The notes under the pieces are model-generated. The model was not told the origin of the DNA and did not search any database. It saw only the letters and a program-made list of their open reading frames with translations. A stretch of 64,000 nt of DNA from positions 7,502,001 through 7,566,000 of the forward strand of contig NC_083402.1 of assembly GCF_020745735.1 (NCBI RefSeq), read 5' to 3'. Both the position numbers and the translations under genes were made by a program. The stretch is from Hemiscyllium ocellatum. Lineage: Eukaryota. Shown piece after piece: positions 2,602 through 43,157 of this stretch (positions within the stretch are counted from its first letter, which is position 1; each line of letters begins with the position of its first letter).

Positions 2602-2728
2602 TCACACACTCGATGTTACAGTGTCTGAAATGGATGGTGATTGGTCAGTTCGAGTACAGCCAGTACCTGAGGTCAACGGCTGCTGGGCCTGATGAGGCTC
2701 AGGAATGCTGGATGACCCTGGATCATTC
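2602..2728 (-). CDS. Siglec-like receptor, predicted terminal cytoplasmic exon (unit 2)
   Basis: Acceptor tatttcag|G, phase 2; reads NDPGSSSIPEPHQAQQPLTSGTGCTRTDQSPSISDTVTSSV*; paralog 53866-53992 has the same length and stop position; an internal donor CAG|gtactg is an alternative. Confidence 0.55.
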
Positions 2729-2827
2729 CTGAAATACATACAAGGAACATTAATATTCAGAGGAAGCTAATGGCATAATCCCCAGGTCACAGTAACAAGA
2801 ATCCTATCTTTTTGCTTATCCCCTCAC

Positions 2828-3065
2828 AGGTCATGGGTCGGGCTGGCTGCTCCTAGCTGTCCATGAGAAGGTGGTGGGGAACTGTTGCTGGATCAAAATC
2901 CTGGAAATCCCTCCCTAAGGGCTCTGTGGCTCTTACCTCCAGAACACCGACTGGAGCAGTTCATGAAGGCAGCTCACCCCCACCTTCTCAAGGGCAACTG
3001 TGGACAGGTAGTCAATGCTGGCCCAATCAGAGATGCTCACGACCGGCAAATGAATAAACAAAATG
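2828..3065 (+). mobile_element. tRNA/Deu-type shark SINE fragment
   Basis: Matches the recurrent SINE body (gagaaggtggtg..caagggcaact..atgctggccca..atgaataaa); same position in paralogous block 54085-54290. Confidence 0.6.
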
Positions 3066-3752
3066 TTCAGATTTAGACACAACTCACCCATGTCACCCTT
3101 GAAGAATTCACCACCAGAAACAGTTCTGCCTTGGTACCAGAATGTACCAAAGCACCCAAGGGTCAGCTTTGAGCAACTGGTTACAAGGCAGGGAGGGAGG
3201 GTGTTGGAGATGTGGGGAAAATTCCTGCAAGGGCTTCCCATCTGCTGTAACTTTGGAGGATGCTACAGAACATGGAAATCTTGGAAAGTGGGGGATGATC
3301 AGGAAACCACGTTCCCACCCAGTGAAAATTCAGCTGCTCGGAGGGCAAGGGAGAAATAGTAGGATTCACAAAAAAGGTCCTTTTTATCCTCAGCACTCAC
3401 TGCAAGTGATAACATTCCAATCTTTCCCTCCATGAAACAGCCATGACAACTCAAAGTGACCACTGTGAGAAAAATGGGGAACACTTTCGTTTTATACAAG
3501 GATGAATTGTAGATTGATTTGCAGAATAGAGCTCTCAGATTAACCTGGAGCTGAAAACTTACAAACAGCCAGAAATTGACCAATTCTGTTCAGAATTTAT
3601 TTCTCTGTCATTTACCTCTCATTTTCCCAGTGAGTGTTTGAGCAACTTGTAAGCAGGAAAATAACACATTCGGAGATCATTAGCAGGAGGCTGCATTCTG
3701 TCTCTGAAAAGGAGATATTCAATACAACCCTGAACTAGAGCAAAAGTGAGAG

Positions 3753-3850
3753 CTTCCTGATGAAGAGCTTTTGCCCGAAACATCGATTCTCCTGCTCCTC
3801 GGAAGCTGCCTGACCTGCTGTGCTTTTCCAACACCACACTCTCGACTCAG
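3753..3850 (+). repeat. Penelope pLTR fragment with hammerhead motif (family 1)
   Basis: CTGATGA-A-GAGC-TTTT-GCCC-GAAACATC followed by gctgcctgacctgctgtgcttttcc. Confidence 0.8.
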
Positions 3851-3894
3851 AGAATTTCTACCGCTACTCTCGTGTCAGTCACTGACTACCTTAC

Positions 3895-3934
3895 CTTTTC
3901 AAAGGTGTCGTTCTCTTGATTTGCTGTGAACACC
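3895..3934 (-). CDS. Siglec-like receptor, cytoplasmic exon 1 (unit 2)
   Basis: tttttttctcttcag|40 nt|gtaagg; phase 1 to 2; GCSQQIKRTTPLKR; paralog at 55075-55115. Confidence 0.7.
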
Positions 3935-39767: not shown

Positions 39768-40110
39768 ATGAAAATGGAATGGGCTACAGAATGTTGCCAG
39801 GCAGCCATTGCAAAACTGGAAGTAATTTTAACAAATAAATGTGTATTAACTGCACCGAACTTTAATAAACCATTTCAATTAGAAGGAGATGTTTGTGATT
39901 TGGGGATTGGAACAGTTCTCCTACAGGACAACGAGGCTGGGATGGAGAAACTTGTGGCTTATTTTTCAAAAAAGGTCGAACCAACATCAGAAAACCGACT
40001 TGCCGATAGAAAAGGAAGTTAGCAGCTTTTCAACACTTTGGATTATATACTCAACATGGAGACAATGAGACTGTCTCTTTTACTGATCATAATCCACTGA
40101 CCTTTAGAGT
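39768..40110 (+). mobile_element. Gypsy RT-RNase H fragment
   Basis: VLTAPNFNKPFQLEGDVCDLGIGTVLLQ..VAYFSKK. Confidence 0.8.
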
Positions 40111-41280
40111 TGGAGTTTAGATCTACAGCTGGAGAAGTGTGATTGGACTGGAGGAAAGCTCATGTGGCACCTTAATTTAAAAATTGAGCAAGGGATAAAC
40201 CAGGTAGCTCCAGGCCAGTGAGTCTGAGCTCAGTGGTGGGGAATTCATTGGAAGCAATTTAAAGGGACAGAATTAATCTACACTTGAGGAGGCAGGGATT
40301 AATCAGAAACAGACAGCATGGCTCTGTTAAGGAGAGGGAAGCAGAAGATGGGAAATTATCTGCTTTTCGTCTGGCCTCAGTTGTTTGTAAGATTTTAGTG
40401 AACATTATTATGAATGAGATTGCAGAGAACTTGGAAGTGCAGGATAAAATACAGTTGAGTCAGTATGGCTTCATCAAAGGCAGGTCATGCCTGAAATAAA
40501 TCTGTTAGAAATCTTTGAGGAGGAAATAGGCAAGTTAGATAAAAGAGAACAAAGTTGGTCATTAATGAGGACATGACCTACTTGGATTTCCAGATGATCT
40601 TTGACAAGGTGTTTCAGTGGAAGCTGCTAAATAAGATAAAAGCCCATGGTGTTAGGGATTAGTGTGGTTTGACAATACTCAGACTTTCAGAGGTATATTT
40701 TGTTCTGGTATTTATTTTTTCATGAAAAGAGGTTGAGATAGAAGTGAAAAAAAGGCTGTTTCAAAACATTAAAGTGAACAGCTTGTGAGGCCTTGGGTGT
40801 TTTTTTTACAAGTTGAAACAATAGAAGCACTCTGAACGAGTGGGGTTAAGCTCCTACATAACCAGGATTTCAGTTTAACTTTGGGAAGCTGCTGGGGTTT
40901 GGAAGCTGCTATACATTGTTTCCTGAAGGCAAATGGAATATTATCCTTCATTGTAAGAGGGATGGAGTTTAAAAAGATGGAGGTTATGCTGCAGCTGTAT
41001 AGGGGGCTGGTGAGACCACACCTGCAGTATTGTCTCCTTAATTCCGAAAGGATGCACTGGGACTGGAGATAGTGCAGAGGAGGTTCACTTGGTTGATTCC
41101 AGAATTGAGGGGCTTGGCTTATGAGGGAAGATTGAGTCGGCTGAGACTACATTCATTGGGATTTAGAAGAATGATGGGGGAATATGATAAAAATATGTAA
41201 AATTATGAAGGAAATGGATAAGGTAGAAGCAGGGAGGTTGTTTCCACTGGTGGGTGAAACTAGAACTAGGGGGCATCAGC
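40110..41280 (+). mobile_element. CR1 fragments
   Basis: GFIKGRSCL and MLQLYRGLVRPHLQYC motifs. Confidence 0.75.
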
Positions 41281-41284
41281 CTTT

Positions 41285-41600
41285 TGTTATAAAGCCTCAA
41301 ATTATCTTGAGAATGTGACTTAAATAAAGTTCTGGGTAATACACATTAATGAATCAAAACCAGCAAATCCATTCTAAAAGATGAAAGGCTGGATAATCAA
41401 GGTTTGTTCAATGTATCATTGTATCACTGTAATCTATTGCCAGAAATTATGTGTCTTATGGTCCTGTTTCACACCACCTGATGAAGGAGCAGTGCTCAGA
41501 AAGCTAGTGCTTCCAAATAAACCTGTTGGACTATAACCTGGTGTTGTTTGATTTTTAACTTTGTCCACCCCAGTCCAACATCGGCTCCTCCACATCTTGT
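41285..41600 (+). mobile_element. Probable Penelope-like 3' end, family 2, with hammerhead motif at 41475-41509
   Basis: CAC-CTGATGA-A-GGAGC-AGT-GCTCA-GAAA-GCTA-GTG; no ORF seen, so PLE assignment is inferred. Confidence 0.65.
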
Positions 41601-43093
41601 AAATGAACTCTGTTTTGTTGAAAAATAAAAGGTTTGACCAGCCAATTCTCTCCTGCAATATCCACTTTACACCTGTTTAAAACAACGAGCAAAGTTAAGG
41701 TCTAGGCTCCCTTCTTAAAGGGTTTGAGGGATCTGGCCTGGTCCATAACAGAATGGGGACTCTTTACAGGATTTGTTGTTTAGTTGCAAACTGGGATTCG
41801 AGTTGTTGGACTTGAAGGCAGCGAATGGTAAGTGTTAGTGTCTGTTGTTGTGGATGTTGGTTTTGGTTGGTGTTGCTTGGTGTAGTCAGGGCTCTTTCAG
41901 TCAGCAAAAGTTTTCTGGGGGTGGAGGAAGTGACCTTGGGGGTTTTACAAAAAGGTGGTTAAAGCCAAGCTGTGGGAATGAGCAAACAAGCTGGAGTTGG
42001 AGCTGCTTCCTTCCGTGAGGAAACGACAGATACTTACAGCAGGAGCTCAACATTTACATTTGTTGGAAACTCCATCAGAATCTTTAGAGAGGCTAAAGTT
42101 CAGTTGAAAATGAAACAGCTTGGGTTAGAGTAAAAAAAAACCAAGGACAACCGAACCTTGTTAAAGGAGCAGCTTCTTCACAAAAGGAATTTCAGGTTAT
42201 GGTCAGCAAGTGGGTAAGGACAGCGGAGTCCATGGAAAGGTCACCCATGGTCTTATTGGATGGTGGGGCAGGCTCAATGGGAAAACAGGCTCAAGGTAAG
42301 AAATAAAGGGTGAGAGGAGAGTTGAGGAGAGATACATTTTCATACAGAGGGATTTAAGAGTTTGGCACTCACTGTCTGAAAGAGTGTTAGAGTTAGAAAC
42401 GCGAGTAACATTTAAGCAGTATTTTGGGATTTAGTAGACTTCCCATTTGCCTCTTCAGTAGCCTGCATCTCTGCTGTCTTACTTCTTTTTGATATTTTAA
42501 ACTTCTGTCTAATTGACTTCCACCTCCCACCTCTACCCATCCCCCAATAATTAGTTTAAAATCCTCAAAACTGTTGGTTAAAAAGGCACAAAGATCAAGA
42601 GCTGTATTCTGGGGGAAGTATAGTCAGATTTTTGTTAACTCACACTCAAACGATGGTCCAAATGCCCTCTTTCTATGCAGTAAATGTCTAAGAGTCCATG
42701 AATCGATAATGAAACCTGAAAGTAATGAATCTTCACATGAGGAATAGTTAATTGTCTCTGGCCGACAGTAATTAACACTCATCAGATTGACAGAAGAGCT
42801 TTGAGGCTGAAACAGACAAGATGGAACTTTCTACCAGAGAAAGGTTGTCACTGCACATCATTCAGGAAATCTCAATGGTCAACCAACTGCAGGGTTTAGT
42901 TACAGCAAGTGGAACATTTTGACTTTCTGTGTTCTGTATTTGTAGTATTATTTGTAAGAAATTAAGGCAAACACTTTTGTCTCATCATTGTCTCTTGTCA
43001 ATCAGTTCTGTCCCAGTATCTGTCTGAAACCTGGGTGTGTCTGCAGTGTTCTGTATCTCCCCTCACTCTCTGGAAGTGTTAGAAAGTACTTAC

Positions 43094-43157
43094 TGTGACC
43101 CTGCACTGAGACTGACAGGAGGACTGCAGAAAGACAAATGTAGAGGGACTTCATCAT
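43094..43157 (-). CDS. Signal-peptide exon (unit 1)
   Basis: ATG..MMKSLYICLSAVLLSVSVQGH then A|gtaagt; phase 1 joins V-A as HTDSANGWSM. Confidence 0.8.

What the first reader, a model, noticed from the sequence alone, without database searches (positions are those of the whole stretch)
2602..43157. Two half-broken duplicates may complement into one gene across a 17-kb intron
Unit 1 has intact L/V-A/V-B but no TM homolog between 12.0 and 22.3 kb. Unit 2 has dead V exons, no recognisable leader, and intact TM and cytoplasmic exons. Phases chain 1-1-1-1-2 to 1068 nt (355 aa). So either a mosaic gene splices over two pseudo-exons that still have AG/GT ends, or unit 1 encodes a secreted V-V protein and unit 2 is dying.
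Basis: inference. Interest (0 to 1): 0.72.

Follow-up and report, generated by a model that had tools for sequence, protein, structure and literature searches.

The report
Shark receptor gene with dead exons
This is one ordinary, already catalogued epaulette-shark immune-receptor gene (RefSeq XP_060690370.1, Siglec-15-like) whose 17-kb third intron holds two decayed copies of its own V-domain exons; it is not a new kind of gene complementation.

Summary
On the minus strand, six AG/GT-bounded exons (L 43157-43094, V-A 30396-30010, V-B 22663-22316, TM 5332-5231, cyt1 3934-3895, cyt2 2728-2602) chain in phases 1-1-1-1-2 to 1068 nt. Their translation is 100% identical to RefSeq XP_060690370.1 (LOC132821675, Hemiscyllium ocellatum, 355 aa). 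That gene's span, 40,556 bp, equals 43157-2602 exactly.

Intron 3 (16,983 nt) holds two dead V exons with intact splice sites. psiV-A has a frameshift and a 6-bp deletion that removes the sialic-acid arginine. psiV-B has a frameshift, a 68-bp deletion and a stop. The rest of that intron is largely LINE and Penelope-like repeats. I found no private TM, tail or leader relic in 12.0-22.3 kb.

A paralogue, LOC132821685 (600 aa), has L-VA-VB-VA-VB-TM with a tail 100% identical to this one. The simplest reading is therefore a multi-V gene whose TM-proximal V block has decayed, not two broken genes rescuing each other.

No transcript data could be reached. Skipping of the pseudo-exons, a secreted V-V read-through form, and NMD-prone inclusion all remain untested.

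The scan has already reported this Siglec-15-like multi-V family several times on other DNA of this genome. Interest is low.

The parts
43094..43157 (-). Exon 1: start codon and signal peptide (64 nt, exits in phase 1)
   Evidence: ATG at 43157, hydrophobic leader, donor GTAAGT. Residues 1-21 of XP_060690370.1.
30010..30396 (-). Exon 2: V-A, a Siglec-15-type V-set domain with the CRVE arginine (387 nt)
   Evidence: Pfam V-set E 9.6e-12. Best PDB hit is human Siglec-15 7ZOZ, E 1.8e-13, with YxCRVE aligned. Splice sites.
22316..22663 (-). Exon 3: V-B, the second V-set domain (348 nt)
   Evidence: Pfam V-set E 1.2e-16. Sequence and splice sites.
22251..22315 (-). Possible read-through extension past the V-B donor (GKKPFPHSSACRRCTVRVEQIL, then stop). 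An ATTAAA lies at 22136.
   Evidence: Open frame. The peptide is identical to the C-terminus of paralogue P0003, XP_060703207.1. Poly(A)-like hexamer. Use of this end is inferred, not shown.
5333..22315 (-). Intron 3, 16,983 nt. It carries the dead V block and retroelements.
   Evidence: Length. 57% of 12004-22315 is repeated elsewhere in the window. RVT_1 ORFs lie at 13094-13546(-), 17372-18022(+) and 20771-21781(+).
11624..12003 (-). psiV-A pseudo-exon (380 nt). It has a 1-bp deletion frameshift and a 6-bp deletion that removes the Arg of CRVE. AG/GT ends are kept.
   Evidence: Alignment to V-A: 88% identity over the exon. Translations. Inclusion gives a stop at codon 338.
6869..7149 (-). 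psiV-B pseudo-exon (281 nt). It has a 1-bp insertion, a 68-bp deletion that removes the F-strand Cys, and an in-frame TAG. AG/GT ends are kept.
   Evidence: Alignment to V-B: 92% identity over the aligned part. Translations. Inclusion alone gives a stop at codon 350.
5231..5332 (-). Exon 4: stalk and transmembrane segment (102 nt). The TM carries no charged residue.
   Evidence: 100% identical to the TM of P0013, P0178 and P0182. Recovered by the generic TM-exon scan.
3895..3934 (-). Exon 5: cyt1 (40 nt, exits in phase 2)
2602..2728 (-). Exon 6: cyt2 with stop codon. The tail has no tyrosine and ends in TSSV. An internal GT at 2666-2665 sits where long-tailed (ITIM) paralogues end this exon.
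   Evidence: Comparison with P0005 and with P0183 and P0024. ATTAAA at 2433.
53850..59229 (-). Relic of a third unit ('unit 0') upstream of the leader. It comprises the V-A acceptor plus the first 13 nt of V-A (about 59141), a cyt1-like exon with a +1 insertion and a GTCGAG donor (about 55.1 kb), and an open cyt2-like exon (53994-53869). It has no TM exon.
   Evidence: Self-BLAST. Alignments. tblastn.

Best explanation
The span 43157-2602 (minus strand) is a single protein-coding gene of the epaulette shark, LOC132821675. It belongs to the shark Siglec-15-like, two-V-domain receptor family.

The gene has one leader, two intact V-set exons, one uncharged TM exon and two short cytoplasmic exons. 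Productive mRNA joins V-B (22316) to TM (5332) across a 17-kb intron. The product is a 355-aa type I membrane protein with a tyrosine-free tail.

The intron contains a second, TM-proximal V-A/V-B block, which is now dead. This block is what remains of a four-V (L-VA-VB-VA-VB-TM) arrangement that is still intact in a paralogue. The two pseudo-exons must be skipped for a productive message. If either is included, the reading frame ends early (codon 338 or 350), and such messages would be expected to be degraded by NMD.

Shown here: the exon chain, its identity to the RefSeq model, the lesions, the absence of other TM or leader exons, and the intact four-V paralogue. Inferred: that the skipping isoform is the one actually made, and the four-V ancestry.
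For: - The spliced translation is 100% identical to XP_060690370.1.
- The gene span in GCA_020745735.1 is 40,556 bp, which equals 43157-2602.
- All ten splice sites are consensus.
- P0004 has the same six-exon architecture at 354 aa and spans 41.5 kb, so long introns are normal in this family.
- P0182 (LOC132821685, 600 aa, 58.3-kb span) is L-VA-VB-VA-VB-TM-cyt with a tail 89/89 identical to this gene's tail. Its TM-proximal V-B is 94% identical to this gene's V-B.
- P0181 has three V domains.
- P0178 carries the same V-B-to-TM junction.
- No TM, tail or leader relic lies in 12.0-22.3 kb.
- The dead block has at least five disabling lesions in about 735 nt, while the 1068 nt of the chain have none. 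Under equal neutral decay, about 7 lesions would be expected in the chain. This is a rough Poisson inference.
Against: - No transcript data were available. A Gnomon model can be chained by protein homology alone.
- Both pseudo-exons keep splice sites as good as those of their functional counterparts, so efficient skipping is not guaranteed.
- Near-identical copies on unplaced scaffolds (P0001, P0179) are modelled with frameshifts in V-B. This lineage may tolerate loss, or those scaffolds may carry errors.
- The V-A and V-B trees are polytomies. The dead block is no closer to this gene's live block than to V blocks of other genes, so the four-V ancestry is plausible but not demonstrated.
Confidence: 0.68

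Rival explanations
1. Unit 1 is expressed only as a secreted V-A/V-B protein. Transcription reads through the V-B donor, stops at 22251 and is polyadenylated near 22136. The downstream pseudo-V block, TM and tail exons are an untranscribed or unused dying remnant, and the RefSeq chain is a homology artefact.
For: - The read-through frame is open for 22 codons.
- An ATTAAA lies 115 nt after its stop.
- Paralogue P0003 (XP_060703207.1, 287 aa) is modelled exactly this way, with an identical read-through peptide.
- The pseudo-exons' strong splice sites would make a clean 17-kb skip harder.
Against: - TM, cyt1 and cyt2 are intact with consensus splice sites, next to heavily damaged V exons.
- The tail is 100% identical to the tail of the intact four-V gene LOC132821685.
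- The V-B donor GTAAGA is strong.
- P0178 shows the same V-B-to-TM junction modelled in a sister locus.
Confidence: 0.12
2. The locus is on its way to becoming a pseudogene. The spliceosome mostly includes psiV-A and/or psiV-B, so most transcripts carry a premature stop and are degraded. Little or no functional receptor is made.
For: - Pseudo-exon acceptors and donors are essentially identical to the functional ones.
- Every inclusion pattern gives a stop at codon 338 or 350, upstream of three further junctions.
- Sister copies are modelled with truncating frameshifts (P0001, P0179).
Against: - L, V-A, V-B and the tail exons carry no lesion.
- V-A keeps both cysteines and the CRVE arginine.
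- Exonic enhancers in the pseudo-exons may already be lost. This could not be scored here.
Confidence: 0.13
3. Reader's historical framing. Two complete tandem genes each lost complementary halves: unit 1 lost its TM and tail, and unit 2 lost its leader and V function. Only the pair together makes a gene.
For: - Whole-gene tandem units exist here. A tail relic (unit 0) lies 10.7 kb upstream of the leader.
- One deletion from unit 1's TM to unit 2's leader would give the present layout.
- The dead block is as diverged from the live block as from V blocks of other genes.
Against: - There is no relic of a unit-1 tail or a unit-2 leader.
- Intact four-V and three-V genes in the same cluster show that serial V blocks under one leader and one tail are a normal architecture.
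- The present-day mechanism is the same as in the best explanation, so this is a difference of history only.
Confidence: 0.07

Closest known systems
RefSeq model XP_060690370.1, uncharacterized protein LOC132821675 (Hemiscyllium ocellatum)
   Same: Identical 355-aa product and identical 40,556-bp CDS span. This is the same gene.
   Different: What could be seen here of the public annotation is the protein sequence and the gene span only.
LOC132821685 (XP_060690378.1, 600 aa), a four-V paralogue in the same chromosome cluster
   Same: Same leader type. Tail 89/89 identical. Its TM-proximal V-B is 94% identical to this gene's V-B. The layout of serial V blocks before a single TM is the same.
   Different: All four of its V exons are intact and coding. 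Here the TM-proximal pair is dead and must be skipped.
Human Siglec-15 (PDB 7ZOZ)
   Same: V-A is its best solved relative (E 1.8e-13). The WSM, LPCSFTHP and RFR motifs and the YxCRVE arginine motif all align.
   Different: The second domain here is V-set, not C2-set. The TM has no lysine for DAP12 pairing. The tail is short and tyrosine-free. The human C2 domain and TM lysine are taken from established knowledge of Siglec-15, not tested here.
LOC132826558 (XP_060698505.1, 354 aa)
   Same: Canonical L-VA-VB-TM-cyt1-cyt2 with the same short tail ending in TSSV, and a span of 41.5 kb.
   Different: It is 80-91% identical per segment. Its DNA could not be fetched, so whether its introns also hide dead V exons is unknown.

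Membership tests
Shark/ray Siglec-15-like two-V receptor family (RefSeq models only; no paper found) | Leader, then Siglec-15-type V-set, then a second V-set, then TM and a short exon tail, with phase-1 Ig exons | tested here: met
   Pfam V-set hits both domains. It is 70-100% identical to 28 or more shark proteins of this architecture.
Shark/ray Siglec-15-like two-V receptor family | Membership of a species-specific tandem cluster with serial V-block copies | tested here: met
   Three units lie in the window. Paralogues with 3 or 4 V domains lie on the same chromosome.
Siglec-15 orthologue (vertebrate SIGLEC15) | N-terminal V-set with the essential F-strand arginine (YxCRVE) | tested here: met
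   The alignment to 7ZOZ keeps C-R-V-E. psiV-A has lost the Arg through a 6-bp deletion.
Siglec-15 orthologue (vertebrate SIGLEC15) | Second extracellular domain of C2-set type | tested here: not met
   The second domain scores as V-set at E 1.2e-16. C1-set reaches only E 0.15, and no C2-set family appears among the six hits listed.
Siglec-15 orthologue (vertebrate SIGLEC15) | Lysine in the TM helix for DAP12/DAP10 association | tested here: not met
   The TM segment VYLPVIPTLLILPICFIIFINF has no charged residue. A paralogue, P0009, does carry a TM lysine.
Inhibitory (ITIM) Siglec-like receptors | Cytoplasmic (I/V/L/S)xYxx(L/V/I) motif | tested here: not met
   The cytoplasmic tail has no tyrosine. 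ITIM-bearing tails occur in paralogues P0005 and P0181. No ITIM exon was found in the window.

The most novel reading that the evidence does not exclude
The two dead V exons may be retained as 'poison exons'. Their perfectly preserved splice sites would let the cell switch between a productive skip (membrane receptor) and inclusion (premature stop, NMD, or a truncated secreted V-V-partial-V form). Receptor output would then be tuned by regulated unproductive splicing. A related reading is that the cluster works as variable V cassettes that splice to a common type of tail, in the manner of protocadherin or UGT1A loci.
Probability: 0.07. Interest if true: 0.55.

Novelty: already known. Interest (0 to 1): 0.2.

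Why it matters
The result mainly clears a false alarm. The apparent complementation of two broken genes is a normal, already modelled gene with decayed internal exon copies.

It has modest value as a worked example of how multi-V immune-receptor genes in sharks shed V blocks. It also shows that annotation pipelines silently chain across pseudo-exons whose splice sites are still intact.

The family itself (Siglec-15-type V domain, second V in place of C2, with activating, inhibitory and signal-less tails) appears unstudied in the literature searched. That point has already been made by earlier reports of this scan.

Tried and rejected
- **Private TM, tail or leader exon in 12.0-22.3 kb.** I ran tblastn with full homologues and with about 60 tails and leaders at E up to 5. 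The only real hit was the V-B read-through peptide. Leader-like hits at 19359-19403 lie on the wrong strand. The generic TM-exon scans were negative or at chance level.
- **Fetching paralogue DNA to compare intron content and compute dN/dS.** The look-up of encoding contigs returned gene spans but no DNA ('sample's file is too large') for P0001, P0004, P0013, P0180 and P0182, and no record for P0178.
- **Trees of V-A and V-B to date the dead block.** Both gave unresolved polytomies.
- **Sensitive DNA search for intron-1 homology upstream of psiV-A.** Only 25-130 nt of weak similarity appears before a LINE. This neither proves nor excludes an intragenic duplication.
- **Idea that LOC132821685 shares this window's tail exons.** Rejected: its V domains are only 86-94% identical to the window's.
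- **Literature.** I found no paper on a shark Siglec-15-like expansion.
- **Scan look-ups by sequence and by words.** Both were blank.
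Full report
**Source and setting.** The window is CpG-depleted (observed/expected 0.24) and has no N runs. It is rich in LINE and Penelope-like reverse-transcriptase ORFs. Protein searches place it in the epaulette shark, Hemiscyllium ocellatum, assembly GCA_020745735.1, on the 153.57-Mb chromosome.

**The observation.**
- Leader: 43157-43094.
- V-A: 30396-30010.
- V-B: 22663-22316.
- TM: 5332-5231.
- cyt1: 3934-3895.
- cyt2: 2728-2602.

Each exon is bounded by AG and GT. The lengths are 64, 387, 348, 102, 40 and 127 nt, which gives phases 1-1-1-1-2 and 1068 nt. Both V exons score as Pfam V-set.

**The pseudo-exons.** The second copies of the V exons keep consensus acceptors and donors but are dead.
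- psiV-A (12003-11624) has a 1-bp deletion and a 6-bp deletion.
- psiV-B (7149-6869) has a 1-bp insertion, a 68-bp deletion that removes the F-strand cysteine, and a TAG.

**What it is.** The conceptual product of the six-exon chain is identical, residue for residue, to RefSeq XP_060690370.1, 'uncharacterized protein LOC132821675', 355 aa. That gene spans 40,556 bp in the public assembly, exactly the distance from 43157 to 2602.

The V-A domain's best solved relative is human Siglec-15 (7ZOZ, E 1.8e-13), with the YxCRVE arginine motif aligned. The gene is not a Siglec-15 orthologue in architecture.
- Its second domain is V-set rather than C2.
- Its TM has no lysine.
- Its cytoplasmic tail has no tyrosine.

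**Is there a hidden TM exon or leader between 12.0 and 22.3 kb?** I found none.
- tblastn with complete homologues finds the TM only at 5229-5336 and the tail exons only at 3.9 kb, 2.6-2.7 kb and 53.9 kb.
- tblastn with the tails and leaders of about 60 homologues, at E up to 5, gives only the read-through peptide directly after V-B.
- A homology-free scan for phase-1 exons with a hydrophobic stretch recovers the real TM exon and nothing in the interval.
- A loosened scan gives as many candidates on the control strand as on the gene's strand.
- 57% of the interval is repeated elsewhere in the window, and it carries three RVT_1 ORFs.

**Family context.** Family context changes the interpretation. 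Paralogues in the same species include:
- P0004: 354 aa, the same six-part architecture, gene span 41.5 kb.
- P0181: L-VA-VB-VB-TM.
- P0182, LOC132821685: 600 aa, gene span 58.3 kb, L-VA-VB-VA-VB-TM-cyt1-cyt2 with all four V domains intact.

P0182's 89-residue TM and tail are 100% identical to this gene's, and its TM-proximal V-B is 94% identical to this gene's V-B. Serial V-A/V-B blocks under one leader and one tail are thus a normal layout in this cluster, and long introns are the rule.

The parsimonious reading is one gene in which the TM-proximal V block has decayed and now lies inside intron 3. Earlier notes of this scan describe the same block-duplication pattern elsewhere in this genome. 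I treated those as leads, and the RefSeq paralogues above are my own check.

**History.** History cannot be resolved. Homology between the live and dead blocks covers these stretches:
- V-A and about 200 nt of its downstream intron.
- V-B.
- About 1.5 kb downstream of V-B, interrupted in unit 1 by a Penelope-like insertion at 20861-21752.

Upstream of psiV-A, only weak similarity persists for about 130 nt before a LINE. The V-A and V-B trees are polytomies in which the dead block is no closer to the live block than to other genes' blocks. Exon identity between the blocks (88-92%) is mostly higher than that of flanking intron (56-87%). This fits a block that was once functional.

A relic of a third unit lies upstream of the leader: a V-A acceptor plus 13 nt, a frameshifted cyt1, and an open cyt2. 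Whole-gene tandem copies therefore also occurred here, so fusion of two tandem genes by a single deletion remains possible.

**How it most likely works.** The productive mRNA must join 22316 to 5332.
- Including psiV-A gives a stop at codon 338.
- Including psiV-B alone gives a stop at codon 350.
- Both stops lie upstream of further junctions, so such messages should be NMD substrates. This follows from the established exon-junction rule and is an inference.

Because the pseudo-exon splice sites match those of the live exons, some inclusion is likely. A secreted V-V isoform is also possible. The frame past the V-B donor stays open for 22 codons, an ATTAAA follows at 22136, and paralogue P0003 is modelled with the identical read-through peptide.

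The chain's 1068 nt carry no lesion, while the dead block's roughly 735 nt carry at least five. That argues the chain has been maintained, though this is a rough Poisson inference. No transcript data were reachable, so isoform usage is not shown.

**Verdict.** Novelty is 'already known', and interest is low.

Noticed in passing
window 2602-2728 (minus strand), internal GT at 2666-2665: The short tyrosine-free tail appears to arise by reading through an ancestral cyt2 donor (CTCAG|GTACTG). Long-tailed paralogues diverge from this tail just upstream of that position and continue into ITIM-bearing sequence: P0005 after ...QAQQ and whale-shark P0183/P0024 after ...QQPTAPG. The 63 nt after this GT are more conserved between unit 2 and unit 0 than the coding part before it.
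   Followed up: partly
window 53850-59229 (minus strand): A relic third unit lies upstream of the gene's leader. It has the V-A acceptor plus only 13 nt of V-A at about 59141, a cyt1-like exon with a +1 insertion and a weak GTCGAG donor at about 55.1 kb, and an open cyt2-like exon at 53994-53869 ending ...DTVTERV. No TM exon was found.
   Followed up: partly
window 20861-21752, 26.5-28.5 kb, 31.2-34.6 kb: There are several copies of a Penelope-like retroelement with an RT ORF and a GIY-YIG motif (Pfam PF01541 at 26694-27557). They are flanked by a roughly 90-115-bp segment present about 10 times in the window. One copy splits the intron just downstream of V-B.
   Followed up: partly
proteins P0001 (81.6-kb scaffold) and P0179 (59.5-kb scaffold): Two unplaced scaffolds carry near-identical copies of L, V-A and V-B (V-A 129/129 aa). 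Their V-B is modelled as truncated by a frameshift. P0179's change is consistent with one C fewer in the CCCC run of this window's V-B, close to the site of psiV-B's own 1-bp insertion. These could be null alleles, haplotig errors or recent duplicates.
   Followed up: no
window 4993-5625 (+): A 211-aa ATG ORF lies antisense to the TM exon. It has no Pfam hit and is probably spurious.
   Followed up: partly
window 50038-50742 (+): A 235-codon proline/threonine/histidine-rich open frame lies in a low-complexity stretch of the intergenic region. No domain search was run on it.
   Followed up: no
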